64,000 nt of DNA from Euprymna scolopes (lineage: Eukaryota), in the NCBI GenBank assembly GCA_053919585.1, contig CM132786.1. One strand, 5' to 3'. Shown here one piece after another: positions 891-63,851 of this stretch (position 1 is the first letter of the stretch; each line of letters begins with the position of its first letter). The position numbers and the translations under genes are program-made. The notes under the pieces are model-generated. The model saw only the letters and a list, made by a program, of their open reading frames with translations, made no database searches and was not told the DNA's origin.

Positions 891-1179
891 NNNNNNNNNN
901 NNNNNNNNNNNNNNNNNNNNNNNNNNNNNNNNNNNNNNNNNNNNNNNNNNNNNNNNNNNNNNNNNNNNNNNNNNNNNNNNNNNNNNNNNNNNNNNNNNNN
1001 NNNNNNNNNNNNNNNNNNNNNNNNNNNNNNNNNNNNNNNNNNNNNNNGGGGTAATGTTTTTTCAATTATAGCATGATACACAAGATAGATAATATAAGAT
1101 AATATGAATAGTAAAATATAAAATATATTACATTTGCTCAATGATAGTCAGAGAATAAACTATGTCAATCACTTTATTG

Positions 1180-1960
1180 CAGATCGTGGAATTTTCACTC
1201 TCCATCACATTATTGCGGGTATCTTCAAATGTCTTATCAGTCGAACATCATTTTTTATCTGACATTTATTTATTGAAAGGAATCCAAGAAATTTGGCTTC
1301 ATTCGTGAACAACCCCAACACCAAATCTAGAAAGTATAAGGACACCACGATAAACCTTTCACATCGTGATATTCAGAAAATTCGTAGGGAAGTCAACCGA
1401 AACTCAAAGAGCACCAGTGCTTCCATTTTTGCAAGAGCTGGGATCGCTACAAGATTCAGACAGCCCCCAGGTAATGCGTATAATGAGACGGCAACGAAGA
1501 TCAAAACTATTCAATGGTCTTCATCGAGCAAACAACATAAAAAAACGAATGGCTTGGGCACAGAATGACATGAAAATGAATTTCCAATGTAACCTATTTA
1601 CAGATGAAGACCCGTCCTACGCTTAACGATCCGGAATGATCAGCCAAAGTTTGGAACTCGAACGAAACTCCAACCCCTTACAGAGTTCCTCGCCAACGAG
1701 GACGTGGAGTCATCATGTTTTGCGCGAAAATCATTAGGGATAAGTTCGTTGGACTATTTCCAGTTCTAGAGGGTGTAAAACTTGTCAGCAATGCGTACAC
1801 AGCCTATTTGGATATACATTTGTCACCATGGCTAGATGACCTACTATTGTCACGTCGCTTTCAGATGATTTTTCTGCATGGCAATGAACCATACCATTCT
1901 GTTAGGGCGATTGCCGCCTTCCTTGAATCTATAGGCTTCTTTGGAGAAACTCTCTTGACC
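1180..1960 (+). mobile_element. Tc1-like DDE transposase remnant (frameshifted, 3' truncated)
   Basis: ORF pieces: RMAWAQ..MNFQCNLFTDE (first catalytic D), VGLFPVLEGVKL..AY, and MIFLHGNEPYHS (degenerate QDNAPxH). Confidence 0.8.
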
Positions 1961-1976
1961 TTTATATATATATATA

Positions 1977-2004
1977 AACCCTAACCCTTACCCTAACCCT
2001 AACC
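1977..2004 (+). repeat. Short interstitial telomere-like (CCCTAA)n run
   Basis: aaccctaacccttaccctaaccctaacc, flanked on both sides by acctttatatatat. Confidence 0.75.
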
Positions 2005-2093
2005 TTTATATATATCTTTGTGTAAACAAATCGAGCGGAGGTATTTCGGACGATATCAAAACATCGTTAAAAAACTCACTACTCGTTCAAGCA

Positions 2094-2165
2094 GCCGCCA
2101 ATAGCGTAATGGTTAGAAGCCTTGAGTGCCGTATAAACGGTCGGGTTTCAATCCTGGCTTGAGGT
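2094..2165 (+). mobile_element. tRNA-derived SINE-like head (Pol III A/B boxes) of HHR family A
   Basis: A box TAGCGTAATGG at 2102-2112. T-arm tcggg-TTTCAAT-cctgg at 2141-2157. Partial acceptor pairing gccgccaa/ttgaggt. No clean anticodon arm. Confidence 0.7.
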
Positions 2166-2173
2166 AGTTGCCT

Positions 2174-2225
2174 GTCTAGCCGCACTGATGAGCTGTGAAA
2201 CAGCGAAACAGTACTGTATGTGGAT

Positions 2226-2228
<3 letters not shown>
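2174..2228 (+). ncRNA. Minimal type I hammerhead ribozyme (family A)
   Basis: Stem I ccgca(2180-84)/tgtgg(2219-23); CUGAUGA 2185-91; stem II gctgt-gaa-acagc; GAAA 2205-08; palindromic stem III acagtactgt; GUA cleavage triplet 2216-18. Confidence 0.9.
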
Positions 2229-2268
<40 letters not shown>

Positions 2269-2815
2269 AATTGAATTCACAATTTTTGAAATTATATGTT
2301 AATTTATTTTCTCATAAGAGTATATGTTACGGATCTGTTTTCTTAGCAATCTTCAACAAACAGAAAAATATGTTATCACTATATTTTTGACTGTCGTGAA
2401 CTTTAAGACAAGTCTATGGAGAAAAACATATTCAAACAAAAGTTTTACATGTAACAAACGATCACAATCATACGTCTGATATCGGTGGTGTAATTTTCAT
2501 TATTGGTCAGGTCTGGATCTTCTTTTTCTATTTATTTATTCCTTTAAGCCATACTTTCGTATTTATAATTATTTCTTTTATTCATTTTATTTAATATAAT
2601 TTACCTCCTTGAATTTATTCTGTCTATTTAATAATTATCATATTAATTTAATTTATATTATTCTGTTGTTTTAAATAAAAATATCATTAGAATATACACA
2701 TATTTTATGTTTTTACGTGTTCATAATTAAAACGTATAATTGACAGTATCACTTCCGATATTCACTCCATAACTGTTAACAAAATAATGATACATTATAT
2801 TACTATCTTCCAAGT

Positions 2816-3982: not shown

Positions 3983-4045
<63 letters not shown>

Positions 4046-4488
4046 TTCTATATAAACAATTATATGCTAACTATATATATATACAATTATATATATATAT
4101 ATATATAAATGCCTTAGCAAATAAATATATGTTAAATGCATTTATTAAAATTTATATTAAATGTTATCCGTTAGAACATCATTTGACAGCACAAAAACTC
4201 AATCCTATTGCCATTTTTTAAGAGGATAACAAATAATTGATTATTTATTGTTTTACTGTTGGAAACATATTTTTATGTTTAATTGCTGTGGAATGAAATA
4301 TTGCTACTGTGTAATTTTTAGTATNNNNNNNNNNNNNNNNNNNNNNNNNNNNNNNNNNNNNNNNNNNNNNNNNNNNNNNNNNNNNNNNNNNNNNNNNNNN
4401 NNNNNNNNNNNNNNNNNNNNNNNNNNNNNNNNNNNNNNNNNNNNNNNNNNNNNNNNNNNNNNNNNNNNNNNATATAGATTATTTTTAT

Positions 4489-8749: not shown

Positions 8750-8870
8750 ATTTGCTTGGTGTAATTTTTAAAATACCCTACGTTAGTTCCGGTGGTCGAG
8801 GGTCCAAATGCTTCTATTATTAGACATGCTGATGATTTGCAGTGAAAGCGAAGTATGTGTCCGTGGATTA
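8750..8870 (+). mobile_element. Degenerate tRNA-like head plus degenerate type I HHR (family C)
   Basis: A-box-like tggtgtaat and B-box-like gggtccaaat, then catg-CTGATGA-tttgcagtgaaagc-GAAg-tatgt-GTC-cgtg. Stem I catg/cgtg pairs. Confidence 0.45.
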
Positions 8871-8999
8871 CTATTTTATTTATAAATAAATTTATTCTGA
8901 TGAGAATGAACTATAAAAATTTAATGAATATCAGGACAAATGATGTGGGTGAATAAGATTAAAGAAGAAAAGAGAAAGGAAACTATAGAGAAAATAGAA

Positions 9000-41110: not shown

Positions 41111-41840
41111 AATAATCATCTAATTCATACTAAATGATTAAATAAATAATGGTGATGGTTATGATCATCATTATCATNNNNNNNNNNNNNNNNNNNNNNN
41201 NNNNNNNNNNNNNNNNNNNNNNNNNNNNNNNNNNNNNNNNNNNNNNNNNNNNNNNNNNNNNNNNNNNNNNNNNNNNNNNNNNNNNNNNNNNNNNNNNNNN
41301 NNNNNNNNNNNNNNNNNNNNNNNNNNNNNNNATCTCAATATATCTATTTGAGATGAATTCTTTAATAATTATTTCACAAAACATACAGGGAGAAGTCAAT
41401 CAGAGAATGTAATTCCGACAGCAAAATCAATTTTATCGATTACAAGTGATCACGTATCAACCCTAATGACACTGACTGATTAAGTTGTTCATAAAAATAA
41501 CCACTATTTCGGTCTATTTTTTAATCGTCCAAGAGGAATACAAAATGAAACAGAAATGTCAATTAAAATATTCTCTCGTAAACAGTCCTATCTGAAAACT
41601 TAAAAGATGGATGCAATCTACATTTGGTGATTATTAGTCATGACTTGTGATAAAAAAGTGAGGACATATTTAGTGGCCATCATTTTAAGAAATCAAGACA
41701 TTTTGCTACTCCGAGACTGCGAGATTGAATCTAAAACTGGCTGAATGACACTTCTATTTATAATGAAACTATAATAACCAAGAAACAGCTCGTAAATTAC
41801 ATTACATTTTTAGTTATACCAATAATTTCAAATAAGTACC

Positions 41841-43277: not shown

Positions 43278-43328
<51 letters not shown>

Positions 43329-43879
43329 TATATATATAATGCAGTAAGCATTATGTGTGTTATTGGTTTTGGGTTTAAGGGAGCGACTATTAAATAAATA
43401 TGCGTGTCGCCATGGAACAGCACCCCAGGAGTACCGAAACTTTTTTAAAAATAACTTTTATCGTTCGGGATCAGTTTTTCAATTATCACGTTCTACTAAA
43501 TGGAACACCTATTTTGTGGCCACTCTCTTGCGTGATCGGTGATTATTGTCGTCTAAAAAGGGGGTTAAACTAAATTTTTACTATCTTTCCAACTCGATGA
43601 TGACTGTTACAAGTGTTCGAGTATGCTGAAAATGAATATCACAGTAATGTCCTATATTAATGTCAGAAAAAAGTAAAAAATATTTAATTAAAAAAAATAA
43701 ACCCAAAGTTTAATTGTATAAAAAATGAAATACGTTATATGTTTTGTTCAACGGGTCTAACATAGCATTTGGTACAAATATTATTTTTCAGACGCTAAAA
43801 TAAAACATTACTAATATGCAATTTTGAAAGCTGAATATGTGAGTATAGTAATGGCATGTTCACAAGAATTTTGTTTGTG

Positions 43880-44545: not shown

Positions 44546-46735
44546 AATTAGTGACACCCGACCGTGAAATGAAATATGCATTTCCTTCTACAACCCCACA
44601 TTTCCACGCTATTTTCCCATTTAAATCGAGACCGCAGACGTCCGTCTACACCGACTCCTTGCTTACTCAAAGACCAGAAACCGGCAATTTGAAGACTTCC
44701 AAATCATTTTCGGGACTAAATCCAGCGAAAGAAGAGCATGGATTCGTCACATTCAGAAATATCTCCAGCCACCCTATCGTTAAACATCCCGGTATTCAAC
44801 CCAGCTAACATCAAATCCTGGTTCATCTAAATCCAAGCATTATCTGACGCAAAGGACACGATACACTTACGAGAAATTACCTACGGACATCGTGGAGGAG
44901 GTAATAGATTTACTCAAAACTCTACCAGAAGAAAACCCTTCCGGCCGGCTGAAGGAAGCAATTCTAAAACGAACTGGCTTATCGAACGAGTCGATGCTAC
45001 TCAATCTATTTACGCAGGTCGAACTTAGAGACTTCACTCTATCGCAGTTGTTCCGTTACATACACACCCTTTTGGGAAATAACAAGATGTCGGAGAACAT
45101 CATAAGGAGTTTGTGGCTGAATAAACTACCTACATCAACAGTGCAAATCCTCGCACCAACGGCAGAAGGAAAAGAGCCAGACAAACTGGCGGAAATAGCG
45201 GACCGGATTCACGAGAACCTCCGGACACGCCGAGTAAACTCGCTACAGCAACAGCCTACGCAACAAAAAGCTGAGCTAAAATCCACGGTCAAGAAGCTGT
45301 CCAAACAATTACAGGATTTACTGAAGGCAGATCGCTAGCGCTCACATCACAATAGGTCGCCCTATAGACGAAGAAATACCAACCGAAGTCGAAACGTGGA
45401 ACGTAACAGAGCGGATGAATACTGTTTCTACAACAGTAAATTCGGCAGTAAAGCGCGACGCTGTACCCATCCTTGTTCCTTCGGTAACAAAACGAACCAG
45501 GGAAACGAGGATGCCAGCCAGTAAAGACAACGATTGTCGCTGGACCCTCTTTAAAAGCTCGTATTTTCTATATCCGTGACAGCATCCATAATTTTCTAAT
45601 AGACACTGGCGCCGAAATAAGCGTAATTTCACCGCTGACTAGTCAGAAGATTACAACCCAATCGTATCGCTTGCAAGCACCCAACGGTACCAAGATATCC
45701 ACATTCGGGGATAAATCACTGACAATCAGTATCGGCTTGAGGCGAACATTCACGTGGATTTTTACTATAGCCGGCGTAACGACGCCCACATTAGGAGTCT
45801 ATTTCCTGGCGAAATTCAAATTGTCTGTGGACATGACCAACCATACATTAACAGGCAACCAAACGAAATTGGTGGCCAGAGGAGTCGCCACTCGATACCG
45901 GTCAACAGGTATCAGCTCAGCCCTACCTGAGGATCCATCTATTCTCGATTACTCCAAAAATAGCCGCAGCTGTCTCAGCCATTCAGGGACACGGACACAG
46001 TCAATCATAGTGCTAAACGCTACATTAAAACTACCGGACAACCAGTACACGCCACCTCAGACGTTTAAAACCGGATAAATACTGAATAGCAAAGGAAAAA
46101 TTTCAGCACATGCTACAACAGAGAATTATCCGACCCTCAAAAAGTGCATGGTCTTCTTCCTTACACATGGTGCAAAAATCGGACAGTACATCCTGGCGCC
46201 CATGCAGTGATTTCAGAAGACTAAATGCCTAAACTGCACCGGACAGATACCCTATTTCTCAGATCCACGATTTTGCAATCGGATTACAGAACGCGACAAC
46301 GTTTTCGAAGTTGGATTTAATGAAGGCATACTCCCAAGTTCCCGTAGCAGAGGAGGATATTCACAAAACAGCCTTGACCACACTATTTGGACTTTACGAA
46401 TTCACTCGCATAACCTTCGGACTTCGAAACGCTAGTCAAACTTTCCAACGTTTAATAGACGAGGTTTTAAGAGGATTGCCATTCATATTTGCATACGTGG
46501 ATGACGTCCTAATTGCTAGTAAAAACTTTGACGAACATAAACAGCACCTGGATCAAACTTTCCAGATATTATCTCACTATGACATAAAAGTAAACGTTGA
46601 AAAATGCATCAAAAGTCAACTTCCTCGGACACACGATTTACAAGGGCGGAATATCACCACTAGCCGAAAAAGTGAGTGCCATCGCTAATTCTCCGCAACC
46701 CACATCTGTTCGACAAGTCCGTCGATTTATCTTTT
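44546..46735 (+). mobile_element. Gypsy/Ty3 LTR retrotransposon internal region (gag, protease, RT), truncated, no LTRs
   Basis: PBS-like tagtgacacccgaccgtga at about 44549. Gag: LKEAILKRTG..LWLNKLP and YCFYNSKFGSKARRCTHPC. Protease: FLIDTGAEISVI. RT: DLMKAYSQVPV..FGLRNASQTFQR..AYVDDVLIAS. Confidence 0.93.
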
Positions 46736-47682
46736 CTTTCAATCTGGGGGGAATATTTTTTGCAGTCACACACACACATACACGCGCGCGCACACACACA
46801 CACACACATACACACACGCGCGCGCATTTTGCACAAAAATAAGTTCTTCCAGCAACGGCACAATTTCAAATACGCCCACACACTTTTCTCACAATCTTAT
46901 TTTTGAAGCCGGCCCAAAATGTATAAAAACGCATCAAACAGTCTTTTAGAATTCAATTAATTCAGTTCAATTCGTTCATTCAGTCACTTCAGTCTTCTTT
47001 CTTTCTTCTCGTTTATACAACACACGAGAACATGCCTTTCGTCTTCACAACATCGTCGCTGCAAAAGCCGTCATTACCATCATTACACACGCCACGCTGA
47101 CACGCAAAAATCACTTATGCACACACGCATCCAGTTCGCACATTTTCTAATTAATAACAACGAATTACCTTCCACACGTATTACTTTCCTCATGGGACTT
47201 TTAAGTAAGGCGAACTTCGCCAGATAAAACACAAACTTTAAAATAATCTCATTATTTTCACACAAGACTGTAACCTTCTAAATTACTTGATTCCACGAAG
47301 GACTTTCATCTAACATTGTAATAATAATGACTTCGAAAGAACTTTCACCGGTCGGACCTTTTTTCATTCACCTTGTTTTTGTAAAAAAGAAAATAAATGC
47401 GGTGCACTTTAAATCAGAAAGACGTGTCATTTTGCTGCATTCTTTTTTTGTTATTTTGTTTGGGGAAAAGAGATTTAATTTTACTTAAACCTCTGAACTC
47501 CTACAAAACACATTCTCGATCGTCCGTTGTTGGCCGACCCCAAACTGCTATGCGCTCGTGTTGTTTGGAGTCTCACCTTTAACTGTATAAAAGAGAAAGA
47601 GAATGATTAGAAAAAAAAAGAACGAAAGCAATGTTTTTCAATTTTGAGGACTGCAGCCAAGTTTGACCTTTAACTGTGCATC

Positions 47683-48110
47683 TGTTTTATAGGGTATCCA
47701 AAACGTAACTAAAGGGGCTTGAACTTAAATAGAGTCTTTATTTTTGATGATATGTTTCTCTAATTCTGACACTATCTGACTAAAACCTTGAGAAATTAAA
47801 AAAGAAAATTCAAACAATCTTTATTCATGAAAAATAATGTCTTTTAAATGCTGCCCATTTTCAGCTTCGCATATTTGTGCTCTTTTGAAACATTATTCAT
47901 GACGGATTGCAGAATTTCTGGATAGCGATTTAATTCTCTTATTATAGTTCTGATGTGTTCCTTCAATTCTTGCAGATTTTAAGGTTTGTTTCGATCTATT
48001 TTGTGACTTGAGCTATCTCTTATATTAAAATGCCGTCGATAAGCTCATTGAATCAAAATAAATGACCTCTGATTTCGGTAAAACAATTTAACAACTTGGG
48101 TACGTTGTTC
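47683..48110 (-). mobile_element. rosa/DD41D-like Tc1-mariner 3' remnant
   Basis: Minus strand reads LKS..RNKP.NLQELKEHIR..ILQSVMNNVSKRAQICEAENGQHLKDIIF; ta-tagggtatcc terminus. Confidence 0.65.
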
Positions 48111-48229
48111 GATGCGATACTTATTCATAATTAATTTCCAAAATAATATCTGTAAAATATCTGAAATAGCGACCAAAATAATCGATTATTGAAAAATGAC
48201 AAAAAAGTTCAACCATTCATAACATTTAA

Positions 48230-48412
48230 GGTATAAAAGCTCTCAGGTCGCACATGTCATCTGTCAAACTGTTGATTTAGCAGGTTTGACATTTCGGATA
48301 TCTGCACTAGCCTTTCGCTGCGTCCCCCACAAGTACGTGATAACTCTGGCAGAAGGTTCATTGTTCAGGAAGCCCCAAGTTCCCAAAATAGAAGCCTCCT
48401 GATTGTGCCATA
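48230..48412. repeat. Dispersed repeat copy 1 (LTR-like)
   Basis: Shares ctgtcaaactgttga, atatctgc, acaagtac, tctggcagaag and ttgtgcca with 51988-52173. Confidence 0.7.
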
Positions 48413-48959
48413 TTCGTCCCACCATTATTTTGTCACATTTGCTCTCTCTTGCTCAAATAAAATCAGAAGAAGATTGCTAACAGAATAATTAGATTTGGAT
48501 AGTCTCTTTTACTCTTTATCTTTTGTTTATAGAACAATATTTAAATTCTTTTCTCTCTTTTTTGCTTTTTTGTTGTAAAAGACATTAATCGTTCCCTTTT
48601 TAACTAGTATATTAAATTTGTTATTTTTTGAAATACATTAATCGTCCCTTCTTTTTATAGTCATTAATTCTACTTTTATAAGAAGTAGTTCTTAATTGTT
48701 CGACAATTATTTTCGGTTTCTGCCATTTATGTACCAACTTATTCGCCGTTTGAAAACCTTTTTGCTTTTTCGTCGGCTATTAACGATTCTGTAATGTGAG
48801 AAAGAGGTATTTTCAAGAATTTTCGGAATTAGAGTTTCCCAAATATTCTCTTACGTTTTTGGACTGTGGCTTGATACTGACGGGGGTGGGTTATTTTTTG
48901 TTTGTTAGAAACTACTTACACAGACGCAACTGGTAGCACAACACATAGTTTCTCTATAT

Positions 48960-51340
48960 CTCATTCCCAATCACAAACGGTTATGTTTCTACCACGTTTC
49001 CCTGACCAGCAAGAACAACACGCATCACTTTTAGATCTGCTTCTGACAACACTCGCCGATGATTGCGTTACGAATGCCCACAGCCCACTTGTAAATGCTG
49101 ATCATGTAGTGATAATAGTTGAAATCACACTAAACTCTAGAGTCAAAACGAAAAAGCCATTACTGAAAACGAGATATTATAAAAAGGCTGAATGGGAAGC
49201 CATCAGGGATCTCATCAGAGACGCCCCATGGCGAAATATCTTCTCACTTCCTGGTGAACAGTGCGCACATGAGACCACTGAGTGGTCAAAACAACAACTG
49301 AAGCACATGTTCCCACGCGGAAGTTTTATAGCAAGCACAATTCTCCCCAATGGTTTACTTCTACGTGTGCGGCTGCCATCGCGCAAAGGCAGCATGCGTA
49401 CCGCAGATTTAACCGACATAATAAATCCATTTCAAACAGACAAAAGTATATAGAAGCCAGAAATAACTTTAAGAAAGAAATAGCGACAGCTAAGAGAGAA
49501 TTTACTGAAACCACCAAAAAAACGCATCGAAGCACAGAAATTAGGAACCTGTGACTTCTGAGAAATCTACAACAGTGTAGTAAATAATTCTCTCACTATC
49601 CAACAACCATGAGGTTGTTTGCTCAGCAACTGAGAAGGCTAACATGCTTGCCAATCATTTCGCCTCCAACTTCACACTGGACCCTGCAAACCACCCCTTC
49701 CCTGGCTTTCCTTTGCGGACAGACGCCACACTAGACGATCTGAAAATCATCCCTTCTCAGGTGCATGCCATCATAAAAAATCTTGACACTTCAAAAGCAT
49801 GTAGAGCTGATCTCATCCCGGCTATGCTATTAAAAAAGTGTTCCGCCAAAGTAGCTCCAATCCTCTCCAAACTTTACCACAAATGCCTTAATGAATCTTG
49901 CTTTCCTACCTGCTGGAAAACTGCTTCTGTTGTACCAGTTTTCAAGAATTCTGGTGAAAGAACTGACCCAGTAAATTCCCGCCTAATTAGCCCCCTCCCA
50001 AAATATTTGAGTCTATTATTAGCCAAGCTCTAGTCCATCACCGTACAGATGCTAAACGTCTGACCGACCAACAATACGGATTTAGGCAAGCCCGTTCCAC
50101 GGCAGATATCCTAACTTTAATCTCTGGGCGTATATACTATTCACTTGACAAAGCAGGGGAAGGTAGAGCGGTAGCTCTAGATATATCTAAGGCTTTTGAC
50201 ACGGTATGGCATGAAGGTCTTCTCAGGAAAATCAGATCATACGTATCACTGGAAGAATACTTAACATAATTAAATCCTTCTTAGATAAGAGAAATATCCA
50301 GGTTGTCATCGATGGTCATACATCTAAACAATATGATAATTGCGGGAGTGCCCCAGGCCTTTGACCTCTATTATTCCCAATATTCATAAATTACCTCCCT
50401 GACAAAATTGTCGGTGGGATGGGTATATATGCTGATGACACCACTCTCTATAACCGACACGACAGGAAAACAAATGAACATGTATCTAGAGAAATAGCAG
50501 AAACACTAGAGGATAACCTCCAATCTGTAGTGGAATGGGGACCAAAATGGATGGTCACATTCAATGCTGCTAAGACTAAACTTGTTTCCTTCAATAACTA
50601 CAAGAAACCTCTTGCACCAATAGCAATGCCCAAATAATCTTTATCTGGAAGTACATCTTTTAAACTCCTCCGCCAAACGTTCCCAGGAAACGTGAGTTGT
50701 ATAAATTACATTGAGTGCATTACCAGAAACGCTGCGAAGAAGGTAGCTCCTCTTTACCGTGCTAGAAAGCTACTAACGCCCGAAAGTATCCTGTACCTCT
50801 ATAAGGCCACCATTCGCCCATGTATGGAGTATTGTTATATTTGGGATGGTGCATCTGCTGCTAGTCTCTCACTCCTAGACAGGGTTCAAAAAAGAGTCGC
50901 CAACCTAATAGGTCCTGAACTATCATCTAAGCTTCAGCCTCTGTCCCATCGACGAAATGTAGCATCCTTCTGCCTGTTCTACAAGTATGTCACTGGGGAA
51001 TGCTCTGACGAACTTCAAGCACTTGTGCTTCCTCGACGTAAATACCCCCGAAAATCCCCACAAGCAGCAAAATCCTACCCCTTCACAGTTTAGATCCCTA
51101 GATGTAAGAGTGACTTCTACTTCAGTAGTTTCTTCCTGAGAACCGCTGAACTTTGGAATTCCCTTCCGAGTTCATGCTTCCCCAACTGTACTGATATGCA
51201 GAAGTTCATGTGTAACGTGAACCGACATCTTGCTGCCCAACTCCCCACATAGTACCCCTGTAGCTTATGTCCCTGATAGTAGCCCCCTACAGAAAATTGG
51301 CAATGTGCCTTATTTGGGGTGAAATTGCAATAAAAAAAAT
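48960..51340 (+). mobile_element. CR1/Jockey-group LINE ORF2 (end of APE, RT, C-terminus) with 3' UTR; most complete copy in the window
   Basis: RFPD..SLLDLLLT..DH (APE end), WKTASVVPVFKN.GERTDP, QYGFRQARST, ALDISKAFD.VWH, YADD, LYKATIRPCMEY, LQPLSHRR, then aataaaaaaa tail. Confidence 0.93.
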
Positions 51341-55957: not shown

Positions 55958-57018
55958 ATTGTTGTTGTTATTATTATTTCTGCTAACGAAGAGTTCTCAC
56001 ATAAGCAATCATCAAAGATTATTCACGGCCAGCAACTGGTAATGTTCCCTGAAATCTGGGTGGCTAAAAGTCTTTCTTTATTTCCGGTACTCTTCACGAT
56101 TTCCCATAACTTTTGAAAATGAATTCGTGTTATCGCAACAGCTGCTTGCCCTTGATTTGCATTTATTGCAATAAACTTTTCCAAGATCCAATTCTAATTG
56201 CTGGAGTTCTGGCTAGGCTGTCTTCTCCCCGTCCTGTCATCCTCTTTGCATCTTATTGACTTTTTGGATTGGTACCTGTTGATACCGATACTACAATATT
56301 TTTAGCCATAAGTACTAATTTTTAATTTGAGTTTTGTTGGTGATATGTTGTAATAATTATTATCATTACTCTTANNNNNNNNNNNNNNNNNNNNNNNNNN
56401 NNNNNNNNNNNNNNNNNNNNNNNNNNNNNNNNNNNNNNNNNNNNNNNNNNNNNNNNNNNNNNNNNNNNNNNNNNNNNNNNNNNNNNNNNNNNNNNNNNNN
56501 NNNNNNNNNNNNNNNNNNNNNNNNNNNNNNNNNNNNNNNNNNNNNNNNNNNNNNNNNNNNNNNNNNNNNNNNNNNNNNNNNNNNNNNNNNNNNNNNNNNN
56601 NNNNNNNNNNNNNNNNNNNNNNNNNNNNNNNNNNNNNNNNNNNNNNNNNNNNNNNNNNNNNNNNNNNNNNNNNNNNNNNNNNNNNNNNNNNNNNNNNNNN
56701 NNNNCTGTTTTCCCAATATTATGCCGGTTAATTTTTCANNNNNNNNNNNNNNNNNNNNNNNNNNNNNNNNNNNNNNNNNNNNNNNNNNNNNNNNNNNNNN
56801 NNNNNNNNNNNNNNNNNNNNNNNNNNNNNNNNNNNNNNNNNNNNNNNNNNNNNNNNNNNNNNNNNNNNNNNNNNNNNNNNNNNNNNNNNNNNNNNNNNNN
56901 NNNGATAGTGTCTAGTACACACTTTTCTGCAAACGTGCACACTACCCGCGGAGTAGAAGAGAAAAGAAGATCTAAACCCAAAGGGAAAAAAGCAAGAAAG
57001 AGAGACATAGAGAGATAG

Positions 57019-59067: not shown

Positions 59068-59106
<39 letters not shown>

Positions 59107-59641
59107 GCTATTTATAATTTATGTTTATGATATTATATAAAATTGCATACTTCGTGTGCCAAGTAGTTGAACGTCGCCCAGAGTCCACGCTGTTTCTTGA
59201 GTCCATCTTACTCGCCACCGTTTTTCTTTATCTATAAATTATTTACAGCCTTATATTAGGAGACGACATGTCTTACCTTTATATATGTACACAAAACCTC
59301 ATACACACATTTCTTAGTTATGATTTTTTTTCTGAAAATACACATGACCTTTCTAAATAGGCGTATAGCTCCTGAATAATTTCTTGATGTCATATGAAAT
59401 ACATATACTTGAACCTTTTTGACAAGACTTTGTGTATAGCATACAAACTGCAATCGGTTTTCGGTTAATGCCCATTCGCTGCTTGATCCAGATTTCTTAG
59501 AGCTCATGTCATGCTTTCAAGCATTTTGGGTGGAGTGTTTCTCTTAAACTGTCCATCACCTTTTGATATATATTACTGTTTACAACATATTGCTTTAGCA
59601 CAGTGTTGTAGGTAACGTACACTTACTTTCTTTCTTTCTTT

Positions 59642-59690
<49 letters not shown>

Positions 59691-59691
<1 letters not shown>

Positions 59692-59825
59692 TAGAAAAAG
59701 TACCCATCGTTGAGTGGGTCCAAAAATAGCTTACAGAAAATGGACTCTCATTTATGGAAGTATGAAAGGTTATGAAAAGGAGGGGTGTAAAGCGATAGCT
59801 TCACATTTTGTGGTATCAAAACAAT
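59691..59825 (-). mobile_element. Helitron 3'-end fragment
   Basis: ctag-aaaaagtacccatcgttgagtgggt hairpin end; matches 61391-61515. Confidence 0.75.
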
Positions 59826-59827
59826 AT

Positions 59828-59868
<41 letters not shown>

Positions 59869-61075
59869 CGTGTGCGTGTGCGTGTGTGTGTGTGTGGACA
59901 ACATTTTTTTTCTCTTAAGAATATTTCATTAAATAAAATAGACGTTTTTTGTCTAATGATTCTATTTTCGGTCCTTTCACACTTCCGAATACCAGTGTTA
60001 GCATCTGGCAAGAACTATCTGATGTAATCACCGTGTTTATCGTAAATTCTAGTATATTCTAATCCTTCAGAATTCATCGTCAGAGATTAATCCATCTAAC
60101 TTGTTTTGAACGATTTATATACGTTTTTCCCTTCTCGCATTGATTAATTATTTTATTTTATTCATTCATTTANNNNNNNNNNNNNNNNNNNNNNNNNNNN
60201 NNNNNNNNNNNNNNNNNNNNNNNNNNNNNNNNNNNNNNNNNNNNNNNNNNNNNNNNNNNNNNNNNNNNNNNNNNNNNNNNNNNNNNNNNNNNNNNNNNNN
60301 NNNNNNNNNNNNNNNNNNNNNNNNNNNNNNCACATAATAATACGATACGGAGAATGGTAAAAGAAAAAAAGTAAATGAAAAAGTTCAATTTGCAAGAATG
60401 AATGAGAATTTGCAAGAAGAGAAGAGAAAGAGAGAGAGAGATAGACACTAATAGAAATATAGAAAAGGGTCAAGAGTGAATTGCGAGGCATGCTGTGAAT
60501 AGAATACATGTTATCTTATAGTTAGATGTCGACGGTCATATGATTTTTATTCAATCTGAGTTCCGCAAAATGACGGGAAAAATGTCCGTTCGTGAATGAA
60601 CATTCCAACCACCGGAAATACTTTTGAAATGTTTTCACGCAAAACAGCGTGCCGTTACTATCCTGCGCCTATTTTACTTATATGACGTTACGAAAGTTCA
60701 ATTCTATGCATTAAAAGGTCATTTCAGTGCGTTTTTTAGGAATCGACGCTAATTCCATATTAGCCGGCACACACGTCACACGAAAAGCGGATAAAAAATA
60801 AAAGACGTTGCGTTCTTTTTCACAGTGGAAATCCTAGGGAAATAAAAAATCTGTGACAATTCACTAATGGATCCGCACAATGTACATTGGAAATCTGTTG
60901 CAATAGTTAGGCGAGTGTTTTCGAGCGCAAATCTTCCGTATCTAGTATGCGCATACACTAAATATGGATTCGTTTAATCTTTTCGATGGACAATCGAATT
61001 ATTACTCTGACCTCGAAACAAGCAAGAAGTCAATACTAGGAATAATGATGGAATAATAATAAAATACTACTACTA

Positions 61076-61134
<59 letters not shown>

Positions 61135-61338
61135 GTATGGTTGTGTAGTTGTATGAATAATGACGGAATAATGATAAAATACTACTACTACTCTTACTCA
61201 TACTACTGCTACTAATATATCAGAATCTATTTCATCTAACATTTATCCTGGAAATGTTTTTGACCTTGAAGGAGTATTTATGGGGGCTTATTATATCAAC
61301 TGGCTGTATGCCTTATATAGGGCGATCTCCATAACAAT

Positions 61339-61390
<52 letters not shown>

Positions 61391-62126: not shown

Positions 62127-62403
62127 CTAGCATGGGTGCGCGGCGTTGCCCTGGTGTTTGGAGGTGTATGCTGAGCAAATAAACAAAAAACAAAAAAGAA
62201 ACGGTCAATTTTTTAAAACTTAACCCCTATTATGACCCCTTAAAATTTATTGTTTTGAGCTCACATCAAGTTATTAAGTAAGATCCATGTCCAATGAACA
62301 TATATCTTAAATTTCAAGTGTTTAGATTCAAAATTGTCGGAGGAGTTTGGTAGGGTTCTCAAAGATCAAATCGTTGAACTTTGACCCCTTAACGGCCAAA
62401 TTT
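62127..62403 (-). mobile_element. Second Helitron 3' portion, truncated by the HHR element
   Basis: ctagcatgggtgcgcggcgttgccctgg (CTAG plus GC-rich hairpin) directly adjacent to the previous Helitron. Confidence 0.55.
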
Positions 62404-62566
62404 CAGGTCGTCGCACTCATGAAGTGTGCAATACTGACGACCTAACCATATGGGCCACGGCGCAATCTATTGGCACTGCCTCGATTTTTAAATTCTTATA
62501 TATATATATATTTTTATCTAGTTCTACATTCTACGATGTGACAAGCAACGCGTCCTGTCTCAGAGC

Positions 62567-62615
62567 ACGTCACTGATGAGATGCAATACATCGAAACCCA
62601 CTTTAGGTCTGGCAC
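62567..62615 (+). ncRNA. Type I hammerhead ribozyme (family B)
   Basis: Stem I gtca/tggc; CUGAUGA 62573-79; stem II gatg/catc; GAAA; stem III accca/taggt (one mismatch); GUC 62607-09. Confidence 0.85.
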
Positions 62616-63058
62616 TGTCCGTTGTCGATGCAATTGCTCGATTCTATCTAATTCTAGGTTCTAGCTTTATCGTGAAAGGTGTATGTGAACGGGTATTTGT
62701 ATATCTATCTATAATCTCCTCTTAATGTCTAATATGTGTAGAAAAGGCGGTTCATCATTCGGAGGGACGTGCTGTCCCTCAACAAATAGGTTGTTCCGAA
62801 ATCGTGTCTGCGTAGTCGGCTAATTTCAGTTAATGTTTGTAGATGTGATATCTACCGCCTGCATACCAGCAGCAACTATCTTAGTTGTATAGGACGCGTT
62901 GCTTGTCACATCGTAGAATGTAGAACTAGATGAAAAAAAATCTATATAAGAATTTAAAAATCGAGGCATATCAATAGATTGCGCCGTAGCCCATATGGTT
63001 AGGTCGTCAGTATTGCACACTTCATGAGTGCAACGACCTGGGTTCACGCCTATGTCGC

Positions 63059-63107
63059 ACGTAACTGATGAGATGCAGTACATCGAAACCCACTTTGGGT
63101 CGGGCGT
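63059..63107 (+). ncRNA. Type I hammerhead ribozyme (family B), stem I weakened
   Basis: CUGAUGA 63065-71; stem II gatg/catc; perfect stem III accca-ctt-tgggt; GUC 63099-101. Stem I acgtaa/gggcgt has two core-proximal mismatches. Confidence 0.8.
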
Positions 63108-63167
63108 TGTCCGTTGTCGATTTAATTGCTCAATTCTATCTAATTCTGAAAGGTGTATGTGAAACGG

Positions 63168-63219
<52 letters not shown>

Positions 63220-63772: not shown

Positions 63773-63851
<79 letters not shown>

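What the first reader, a model, noticed from the sequence alone, without database searches (positions are those of the whole stretch)
2015..2230. Second, unrelated tRNA-head plus minimal hammerhead element with a dimer-type palindromic stem III
Seen in sequence: a ~215-bp unit between TA runs contains a tRNA-like head (2094-2165) followed 15 nt later by a perfect HHR core with a GUA site. Stem III, ACAGUACUGU, is a 10-nt palindrome with only a 2-nt loop. Established: such minimal HHRs cleave poorly as monomers and work as dimers, as in Penelope pLTRs and satellite HHRs. It has no visible similarity to family B outside the core. Inference: either cleavage gives a SINE-like Pol III transcript a defined 3' end, or two transcripts dimerise to cleave.
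Basis: partly seen in the sequence, partly recalled or inferred. Interest (0 to 1): 0.82.

Follow-up and report, generated by a model that had tools for sequence, protein, structure and literature searches.

The report
Truncated hammerhead-ribozyme retroelement copy in (TA)n
This is one young, 5'-shortened copy of a very abundant non-coding jumping element of a mollusc that carries an intact self-cutting hammerhead RNA motif next to tRNA-gene-like promoter boxes; it is a real example of a kind of element already known from blood flukes, mussels and salamanders.

Summary
The hammerhead ribozyme (HHR) is real. Window 2174-2228 (+) holds a complete type I motif: CUGAUGA, a 4-bp helix II, GAA, the palindromic helix III ACAGUACUGU, a GUA site cut at 2218/2219, and helix I. 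A strict descriptor hits only here and in 0 of 300 shuffles.

The "tRNA head" is weaker. Box A-like and box B-like motifs sit at tRNA spacing. ARAGORN and the Rfam tRNA model find no tRNA, and no parent tRNA can be named.

The unit is not a lone oddity. About 19,500 contigs of a DNA run and 15,100 of an RNA-like run match it at 80% or more, and many span boxes plus HHR. Family copies continue at least 30 nt upstream of 2015. One contig repeats the unit with a 285-nt period. So this is about three quarters of a ~285-nt unit, inserted into a (TA)n microsatellite.

Best reading: a solo, 5'-truncated copy of a retrozyme / Schistosoma Sm-alpha-type non-autonomous retroelement, probably mobilised by a (TA)n-targeting Penelope-like element. 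Folding favours a double hammerhead over the monomer, but not beyond chance. Cleavage, RNA circles and Pol III use are untested.

The scan has already reported this kind of element many times on other pieces of this genome. It is a new member of a known kind.

The parts
2006..2015 (.). (TA)5, the 5' flank of the insertion (part of the target microsatellite)
   Evidence: Read directly; TA loci listed.
2016..2228 (+). Unit A: a 213-bp, 5'-truncated solo copy of a ~285-nt repeat unit. GC is 0.46 and there is no T4 run inside.
   Evidence: Family contigs continue upstream of 2015 with a shared non-TA consensus in four runs. The X19 contig shows a second unit start 285 nt after the first.
2102..2112 (+). 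Box A-like motif TAGCGTAATGG
   Evidence: One mismatch to TRGCNNAGTGG. The only A+B pair in the window; shuffles give a mean of 0.13.
2144..2154 (+). Box B-like motif GGTTTCAATCC inside a possible T-arm hairpin (2141-2145 / 2153-2157)
   Evidence: Two mismatches to GGTTCGANNCC. Diverged family variants carry GGTTCAATCCC (loose ends). No tRNA call by ARAGORN or Rfam.
2174..2184 (+). Helix I, 5' strand
   Evidence: Pairs listed: 2180-2184 with 2219-2223, and 2174-2176 with 2226-2228.
2185..2191 (+). Catalytic core C3-A9, CUGAUGA
   Evidence: This copy matches the family majority at every core position.
2192..2204 (+). Helix II, GCUG/CAGC, with loop UGAAA
   Evidence: The common variant C2193U keeps a G-U pair.
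2205..2207 (+). Core G12 A13 A14
2208..2217 (+). Helix III, the palindrome ACAGUACUGU (A15.1 to U16.1)
   Evidence: It forms a 10-bp intermolecular helix in the homodimer minimum-energy fold. No variant reaches 5% between 2206 and 2232 in any run.
2218..2219 (+). Predicted cleavage site, GUA | U
   Evidence: Position follows from the HHR numbering. Cleavage was not tested.
2219..2228 (+). Helix I 3' strand, which is also the 3' end of the element
   Evidence: Family contigs run into TA-rich sequence after about 2230.
2229..2266 (.). (TA)n, the 3' flank (target microsatellite)
8828..8876 (+). Decayed relative of the unit-A HHR tail (CTGATGA ... GTGGATTACTAT)
   Evidence: Local alignment score 30 against a shuffle mean of 13.5 and maximum of 26; 0 of 1000 shuffles reach it. 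Alignment shown.

Best explanation
Unit A is a young, 5'-truncated solo insertion, about 213 of ~285 nt. It belongs to a very abundant non-coding retroelement family of a mollusc genome, of the retrozyme / Schistosoma Sm-alpha type.

The family unit carries an internal module with tRNA-gene-like box A and box B. About 20 nt downstream it carries a canonical metazoan type I hammerhead, whose helix I closes 10 nt before the element's 3' end.

Inferred life cycle:
1. Tandem or read-through transcripts carry two or more units. These may be driven by Pol III from the A/B boxes or by outside promoters.
2. The HHRs of neighbouring units (or of two RNAs) pair through the palindromic helix III into a double hammerhead and cut after GUA.
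3. This releases unit-length RNA with a 5'-OH and a 2',3'-cyclic phosphate.
4. That RNA can be circularised by a tRNA ligase.
5. It is then copied into (TA)n microsatellites by the reverse transcriptase and GIY-YIG endonuclease of a Penelope-like element. Priming occurs at the element's 3' end next to (TA)n, and copying often stops early, which gives 5'-truncated copies such as this one.

This particular copy has an intact, consensus HHR but no partner HHR in cis. On its own it could make only one cut in any transcript that crosses it, and it is most likely just a neutral insertion.

Shown here: the motif, family membership, abundance, 5' truncation, the existence of tandem copies, the (TA)n context, and presence in RNA libraries. 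Inferred: cleavage, dimer dependence, RNA circles, Pol III use, and the Penelope-like partner.
For: - The motif is complete and not a chance match.
- Family size: 19,535 contigs in DNA run X3 and 15,114 in RNA-like run X1 match at 80% or more. Summed word depth is about 10^6 in a DNA run with less than 1x coverage.
- Contigs covering 2100-2232 link the boxes to the HHR in X1 and X3. X7 and X19 hold near-identical copies (1-2 differences).
- This copy differs from the family majority at only a few sites: a private G2126 where 99.7% of depth has C, plus 2055, 2117 and 2134. It is identical to the majority across the HHR.
- 5' truncation: loose ends before 2015 share one non-TA consensus in four runs.
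- Tandem form: the 349-nt X19 contig holds the whole unit plus a second, slightly different start 285 nt later.
- 3' end: contigs run into TA-rich sequence after about 2230.
- All four good HHR cores in the window lie 21-136 nt from a (TA)n locus.
- RNA: the unit's words are held at 0.47-0.71 in RNA runs. X1 holds 0.04 of a 1.2-kb flank, against 0.21 for the equally large DNA run X10.
- In X1 the HHR segment is 3-4 times enriched over the 5' part relative to DNA. Core-killing variants at G5, G8 and G12 are rarer there: 1.1, 1.2 and 3.6% against 6.2, 8.2 and 8.2% in DNA.
- The dimer minimum-energy fold is the double hammerhead; the monomer minimum-energy fold is not an HHR.
- Literature: retrozymes, including those of mussel (PMC7229834); dimeric canonical HHRs (PMC4209133); (TA)n targeting by Penelope-like elements (PMC8557442); Sm-alpha as promoter plus HHR, Pol III-transcribed, cutting multimers in cis or trans (PMC6765202); the Sm-alpha tRNA-Gln-like part (PMC2770079); retrozymes as derivatives of Penelope-like elements (10.64898/2026.07.22.740005).
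Against: - No cleavage ends or circular junctions could be seen, because the runs were laid as contigs, which cannot show them (table 6 empty).
- The dimer energy gain is no better than for shuffled sequences.
- The whole-unit fold is not unusually stable (z = -0.68).
- tRNA ancestry is not recognised by any model.
- No Penelope-like element was identified in the window. The partner is inferred only from the (TA)n target and the literature.
- The copy itself is solo, not tandem.
- Rfam does not reach its gathering score for the HHR.
- The kind of run X1 (RNA) is the tool's guess.
- Depth sums are not copy numbers.
Confidence: 0.75

Rival explanations
1. Plain tRNA-derived Pol III SINE. Transcription starts just upstream of box A. 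The HHR trims the read-through transcript to a defined 3' end, and this trimmed RNA is what gets retrotransposed.
For: Box A and box B sit at tRNA spacing. There is no T4 run between box A and the HHR, and the first T5 is at 2283. The HHR sits at the extreme 3' end of the element. Sm-alpha is reported to be Pol III-transcribed (PMC6765202).
Against: Seventy-eight nt of family sequence lie upstream of the putative start in this copy, and at least 30 nt more (about 70 by the 285-nt period) in other copies. A head-first transcript would not carry them. Genomic copies retain the 10 nt downstream of the cut site, so their templates were not 3'-trimmed at their own HHR. No tRNA is recognised. Pol III could still drive tandem arrays, which merges this reading into the main explanation.
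Confidence: 0.12
2. A fragment of an autonomous Penelope-like element (the 3' end of its pseudo-LTR), not a separate non-autonomous family.
For: Pseudo-LTRs of Penelope-like elements carry HHRs near the 3' end with a short palindromic helix III. Truncated single copies are common, and these elements prefer (TA)n (PMC4209133, PMC6765202, PMC8557442).
Against: The unit repeats with a 285-nt period in a contig, which is far shorter than a Penelope-like element. Helix II is 4 bp and helix III is present, which is the canonical architecture and not the min-HHR one (PMC4209133). No RT/EN ORF adjoins the unit. The only RT fragment in the window is 44 kb away. The contig count is enormous for a 213-bp stretch.
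Confidence: 0.06
3. A host-domesticated small RNA gene, for example a regulatory Pol III transcript matured by the ribozyme, rather than selfish DNA.
For: It is present in many RNA libraries of two organisms. The HHR is intact and the 3' segment is strongly conserved.
Against: There are tens of thousands of diverged copies showing transition decay. The copy is inserted in a microsatellite and is 5'-truncated. Nothing is locus-specific.
Confidence: 0.03

Closest known systems
Schistosoma Sm-alpha / Sj-alpha SINE-like retroposons (Ferbeyre et al. 1998; Laha et al. 2000; as summarised in PMC6765202 and PMC2770079)
   Same: A short non-coding repeat of about 300 nt that joins a tRNA-related Pol III promoter module to a type I hammerhead. 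It is very high in copy number and occurs both dispersed and in tandem. The HHR is thought to free units from multimeric transcripts, in cis or in trans.
   Different: The host phylum is different (a mollusc, by run labels and earlier scan notes), and no sequence similarity was tested or seen. The Sm-alpha tRNA part is recognised by tRNAscan-SE as tRNA-Gln-like (PMC2770079), whereas the module here is recognised by no tRNA tool. The cut site here is GUA. The strict (TA)n insertion context seen here is not part of the Sm-alpha description that I could read.
Metazoan non-LTR retrozymes (Cervera and de la Pena 2020, PMC7229834; Li et al. 2026 preprint, 10.64898/2026.07.22.740005)
   Same: Units of 170-400 nt with a canonical type I HHR, moderate to low GC and no ORF. 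They form tandem arrays, are abundant in RNA, are also found in molluscs (mussel, about 5000 HHRs), and are proposed to depend on Penelope-like elements.
   Different: This copy is solo and truncated. RNA circles are not shown here. The retrozyme papers I read do not describe a tRNA-like box A/B module. Abundance appears to be orders of magnitude above the mussel figure.
Amphibian satellite 2 / axolotl HHR repeats (Forster et al. 1988; PMC7229834)
   Same: A type I HHR with a weak, palindromic helix III that cleaves efficiently only as a double hammerhead in dimeric transcripts.
   Different: Helix III here is longer: 3-4 bp as a hairpin, against 1-2 bp. Monomer activity therefore cannot be excluded.
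Penelope-like element min-HHRs (Cervera and de la Pena 2014, PMC4209133; Lunse et al. 2017)
   Same: Association with retroelements, a predicted dimeric mode, and a position near the element's 3' end.
   Different: Min-HHRs lack helix III, have a helix II of 7-8 bp, and have a shorter helix I. Unit A has the canonical architecture.

Membership tests
Hammerhead ribozyme, type I | Conserved core CUGANGA ... GAAA with a UH cleavage site | tested here: met
   2185-2191 CUGAUGA, 2205-2208 GAAA, G2216 U2217 A2218. Descriptor hit in the window, 0 of 300 shuffles.
Hammerhead ribozyme, type I | Three helices around the core, with helix I open and helices II and III closed by loops | tested here: met
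   All pairs are listed and standard. The constrained HHR fold is -10.7 kcal/mol.
Hammerhead ribozyme, type I | Reaches the Rfam gathering score of a hammerhead model | tested here: not met
   No gathering hit. The best match is Hammerhead_3 at 22.4 bits against 48.5, aligned in a permuted register. Short palindromic-helix-III variants are poorly covered by these models, so this lowers database membership and not the motif call.
Hammerhead ribozyme, type I | Self-cleavage | not testable with these tools
   The runs were laid as contigs, which show no molecule ends (table 6).
Metazoan non-LTR retrozyme | Short tandem repeats (170-400 bp), each with a type I HHR | tested here: inconclusive
   This locus holds a single 0.75 unit. 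The family does occur in tandem: the X19 contig has a 285-nt period and the two units are not identical.
Metazoan non-LTR retrozyme | Non-coding, with GC below about 45% | tested here: met
   No ORF in the unit. GC is 0.46, which is borderline.
Metazoan non-LTR retrozyme | [quoted passage not shown] | tested here: inconclusive
   Present in labelled RNA runs at 0.47-0.59 of the words and in RNA-like runs at up to 0.71. The flank control is low. No circular junction was seen or could be seen.
Sm-alpha-type SINE-like retroposon | tRNA-derived internal Pol III promoter upstream of the HHR | tested here: inconclusive
   Box A and box B are 42 nt apart and no T4 run precedes the HHR. No tRNA is recognised. 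Transcription was not tested.
Sm-alpha-type SINE-like retroposon | High-copy dispersed repeat that links the promoter module and the HHR | tested here: met
   About 19,500 and 15,100 matching contigs, including pieces spanning 2100-2232.
Classical tRNA-derived SINE | tRNA-related head at the extreme 5' end of the element | tested here: not met
   Box A lies 87 nt inside this truncated copy, and the family continues at least 30 nt further upstream.
Penelope-like element min-HHR | No helix III; long helix II (7-8 bp) | tested here: not met
   Helix III is present (2208-2217) and helix II is 4 bp. Definition taken from PMC4209133.

The most novel reading that the evidence does not exclude
The box A/B module may be a working internal Pol III promoter that makes this retrozyme-type family self-transcribing. 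The superfamily sharing this HHR tail may reach 10^5-10^6 copies, several per cent of a ~5.9-Gb genome. That would make it the largest hammerhead population known in an animal, and its RNA pool would be selectively enriched for catalytically intact copies.
Probability: 0.2. Interest if true: 0.55.

Novelty: new member of a known kind. Interest (0 to 1): 0.3.

Why it matters
This finding adds a clean and very abundant example of the "promoter module plus hammerhead" design outside flatworms. I found no paper describing HHR-bearing SINE-like elements in this mollusc lineage.

If cleavage, RNA circles and Pol III use were confirmed, the family would be a good system for two questions: how ribozyme-processed RNAs are fed to reverse transcriptases of Penelope-like elements, and why these elements target (TA)n.

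For genome annotation it matters because such repeats are missed by Rfam thresholds and by tRNA finders.

As a single locus it is ordinary. The scan has already reported this kind of element many times in this genome.

Tried and rejected
- Rfam at gathering threshold over the whole window: nothing.
- ARAGORN at default and relaxed thresholds: no tRNA in unit A.
- Rfam tRNA model in a 93-nt search at E<=10: nothing. The parent tRNA therefore cannot be named.
- blastn (word size 7) and nhmmer --max with unit A against the window: no second copy, only core-level matches to family B.
- Exact and degenerate HHR patterns in metagenome contigs (2 scans) and viral contigs (1 scan): 0 hits. No independent set of copies could be fetched, so no covariation test on aligned copies was possible.
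- Variant tables show only one-sided transitions: C2193U and C2181U keep G-U pairs, while G2192A breaks a pair. There is no compensatory evidence.
- Whole-unit fold: z = -0.68, not special.
- Dimerisation energy against shuffles: not significant.
- I first read the X19 contig as a possible circular-RNA wrap-around. I rejected this because the two overlapping unit starts differ (2 mismatches in 32 nt) and a k-mer contig cannot repeat identical words. It is a tandem array.
- I first read the loose ends at 2138, 2145 and 2174 as different heads on one tail. On alignment by eye they are diverged versions of the same module.
- Look-ups of earlier findings by sequence and by several word sets were blank.
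- Ferbeyre 1998 and Lunse 2017 are not held in the library. They are cited only through reviews.
- The sigma-70 promoter/terminator scan is irrelevant for a eukaryote.

Full report
**1. The observation**

Reading window 1700-2600 shows a 213-bp block, 2016-2228. It lies between (TA)5 at 2006-2015 and a (TA)n run at 2229-2266.

On the + strand, 2174-2228 forms a complete type I hammerhead:
- Helix I 5' strand: 2174-2184.
- Core CUGAUGA: 2185-2191.
- Helix II: GCUG/CAGC with loop UGAAA, 2192-2204.
- Core GAA: 2205-2207.
- Helix III: ACAGUACUGU, 2208-2217.
- A17 at 2218, so the predicted cut is 2218/2219.
- Helix I 3' strand: 2219-2228.

All pairs are standard. Also, a 2-nt hairpin loop is sterically unrealistic, so as a monomer helix III is really 3 bp plus the palindromic tetraloop GUAC.

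A strict structural descriptor finds only this locus in the window and none in 300 shuffled windows. The descriptor requires 5 bp of helix I, 4 bp of helix II, at least 3 bp of helix III starting with A-U, and H17 not G. Rfam gives only a sub-threshold hit (Hammerhead_3, 22.4 bits, E = 0.017).

**2. The "tRNA head"**

TAGCGTAATGG (2102) and GGTTTCAATCC (2144) resemble box A and box B and lie 42 nt apart, as in a tRNA gene. A T-arm-like hairpin can be drawn. This is the only such pair in 64 kb, against 0.13 expected per shuffled window.

There is no D stem or acceptor stem. ARAGORN finds nothing even at 80% thresholds, although it calls the family B head tRNA-Ala(TGC)-like. The Rfam tRNA model gives no match at E<=10 in a 93-nt search.

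Diverged family variants seen as loose ends carry a better box B (GGTTCAATCCC). tRNA ancestry is therefore plausible, but it is not demonstrated and no parent tRNA can be named. There is no T4 run between box A and the first T5 at 2283, so a Pol III transcript could read through the ribozyme.

**3. It is a family, and this copy is truncated**

The window holds no second copy. It holds only a decayed relative of the HHR tail at 8828-8876 (score 30; 0 of 1000 shuffles reach it).

Public runs of the same organism tell the rest. At 80% likeness or more, 19,535 contigs of DNA run X3 and 15,114 of RNA-like run X1 lie on 2010-2232. Summed word depths are near 10^6, although X3 covers the genome less than once. 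The tool warns that this is not a copy number. I take it to mean at least 10^5 related segments.

Pieces spanning 2100-2232 join the box module to the HHR in both runs. X7 and X19 hold copies with 1-2 differences.

Against the family majority, this copy has a private G at 2126, where 99.7% of depth has C. It carries minority or half-frequency letters at 2055, 2117 and 2134. Its HHR equals the majority everywhere. It is therefore a young copy.

Loose ends before 2015 share one non-TA consensus of about 30 nt in four runs, so family members continue upstream where this copy stops. The 349-nt X19 contig (organism B, rRNA-depleted RNA library) contains the whole unit and, 285 nt later, a second unit start that differs at 2 of 32 positions. 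This is a tandem array with a 285-nt period, not a circle artefact.

At the 3' side, contigs run into TA-rich sequence after about 2230. The element thus ends 10 nt past the cut site, next to (TA)n.

**4. RNA**

Labelled RNA-seq runs hold 0.47-0.59 of the unit's sampled words, and RNA-like runs hold up to 0.71.

As a control, I searched a 1.2-kb flank. DNA run X10 (1116 M letters) holds 0.21 of it, while X1 (1074 M letters) holds only 0.04. X1 is therefore not plain genomic DNA.

Per letter sequenced, X1 carries as much of the 5' part of the unit as DNA does, and 3-4 times more of the HHR segment.

Variant shares are the same in X1 and X3 in the 5' part:

| Position | X3 (DNA) | X1 (RNA-like) |
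|---|---|---|
| 2055 | 50.2% | 50.0% |
| 2134 | 65.1% | 66.0% |

Core-inactivating G>A changes are rarer in X1:

| Core position | X3 (DNA) | X1 (RNA-like) |
|---|---|---|
| G5 | 6.2% | 1.1% |
| G8 | 8.2% | 1.2% |
| G12 | 8.2% | 3.6% |

This suggests that RNA is enriched for intact ribozymes. It rests on summed contig depths and on the tool's guess of library kind. Contigs cannot show cleavage ends or circles.

**5. Monomer or dimer**

With ViennaRNA, the 67-nt monomer prefers a non-hammerhead fold (-14.7 kcal/mol; the HHR fold is -10.7). Two copies fold into exactly the double hammerhead of Forster et al. (-38.6): a 10-bp intermolecular helix III and helix I formed in trans.

The gain of -9.2 kcal/mol is not unusual for shuffled sequences (mean -8.0; 67 of 200 reach it). 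The support is therefore qualitative.

No variant reaches 5% anywhere in 2206-2232, whereas 11 positions vary in 2163-2205. This fits constraint on helix III, the cut site and the 3' tail, although nearness to contig ends may contribute.

By the definitions in PMC4209133, this is the canonical metazoan HHR: helix II of 4 bp and a short palindromic helix III, thought to act as a dimer in tandem repeats. It is not the Penelope "min-HHR", which has no helix III and a helix II of 7-8 bp. PMC7229834 notes that invertebrate retrozyme HHRs with 2 bp plus a tetraloop cleave well alone. With 3 bp plus a tetraloop here, monomer activity cannot be excluded.

**6. What it is**

The features are: a ~285-nt unit with both tandem and solo copies, a canonical type I HHR, no ORF, high abundance, presence in RNA, frequent 5' truncation, a fixed 3' end, and insertion into (TA)n. 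All four good HHR cores in the window lie 21-136 nt from one of 19 TA loci.

These features match animal non-LTR retrozymes (PMC7229834) and Schistosoma Sm-alpha. Reviews describe Sm-alpha as a promoter followed by an HHR, apparently Pol III-transcribed, with the ribozyme freeing units from multimers in cis or trans (PMC6765202). Its tRNA-Gln-like part is noted in PMC2770079.

(TA)n is the preferred target of several clades of Penelope-like elements (PMC8557442). [quoted passage not shown] The Penelope-like partner is an inference here. The only RT fragment in the window (46311-46688, RVT_1) is 44 kb away and untyped.

**7. Against the simple SINE reading**

Box A lies 87 nt inside this truncated copy and about 160 nt inside the full unit. 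A head-first Pol III transcript could not carry the upstream part. Genomic copies also keep the 10 nt beyond the cut.

Pol III could still serve in tandem arrays. It would start in one unit and read to the next HHR, and cutting at both HHRs would give a full permuted unit.

**8. Verdict**

The design is known and has been reported many times by this scan on other pieces of this genome. I found no publication describing it in this lineage. It is a new member of a known kind, of modest interest.

Noticed in passing
window 1979-2004: About 4.5 units of the telomere-type repeat CCCTAA (one unit reads CCCTTA) sit inside the same (TA)n microsatellite, 11 nt upstream of unit A's truncated 5' end. On the minus strand this places TTAGGG repeats just 3' of the element's cDNA-sense strand. 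It is the only such repeat in 64 kb, against 0.08 expected. It could be a telomerase or RT-made filler at a broken or target-primed site, or an unrelated insertion. It is not part of the family consensus.
   Followed up: partly
window 62380-63170 and 730-890: Family B hammerhead elements (helix II GAUGCA.UACAUC, GUC site) occur three times. The copy pair at 62.4-63.2 kb includes an inverted duplication of the head region (62380-62480 against 62980-63040). ARAGORN at relaxed threshold calls the head tRNA-Ala(TGC)-like. All copies abut (TA)n at their 3' side.
   Followed up: partly
window 891-1047, 4325-4471, 41178-41331, 56375-56704, 56739-56903, 60173-60330: Six N runs of about 150-330 bases. 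The first one begins exactly where the head of the inverted family B copy would lie. They were left as they are.
   Followed up: no
window 44892-51093: A cluster of short ORFs on the + strand in a GC-richer stretch. One carries a reverse-transcriptase domain (46311-46688, RVT_1, E = 7.6e-20) and one gives a weak DUF7041 hit. This is probably a decayed retrotransposon. Its clade was not determined.
   Followed up: partly
window, 19 loci (e.g. 3984-4107, 43281-43337, 59068-59865, 61079-61390, 63775-63846): (TA)n microsatellites are very frequent, with 19 loci of 6 or more units in 64 kb. Every good hammerhead core lies within 136 nt of one. The other TA loci were not checked for decayed insertions.
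   Followed up: partly
window 2140-2225, in run X1: In the RNA-like run the hammerhead segment is 3-4 times more abundant than the 5' part of the unit, relative to DNA, and it carries fewer core-inactivating variants. This hints at a separate, abundant RNA species with an intact ribozyme.
   Followed up: partly
window 1700-1955: The sequence left of the microsatellite looks like a fragment of a mariner/Tc1-type transposase gene with stop codons (5 stops in one frame of 1650-1960).
   Followed up: no
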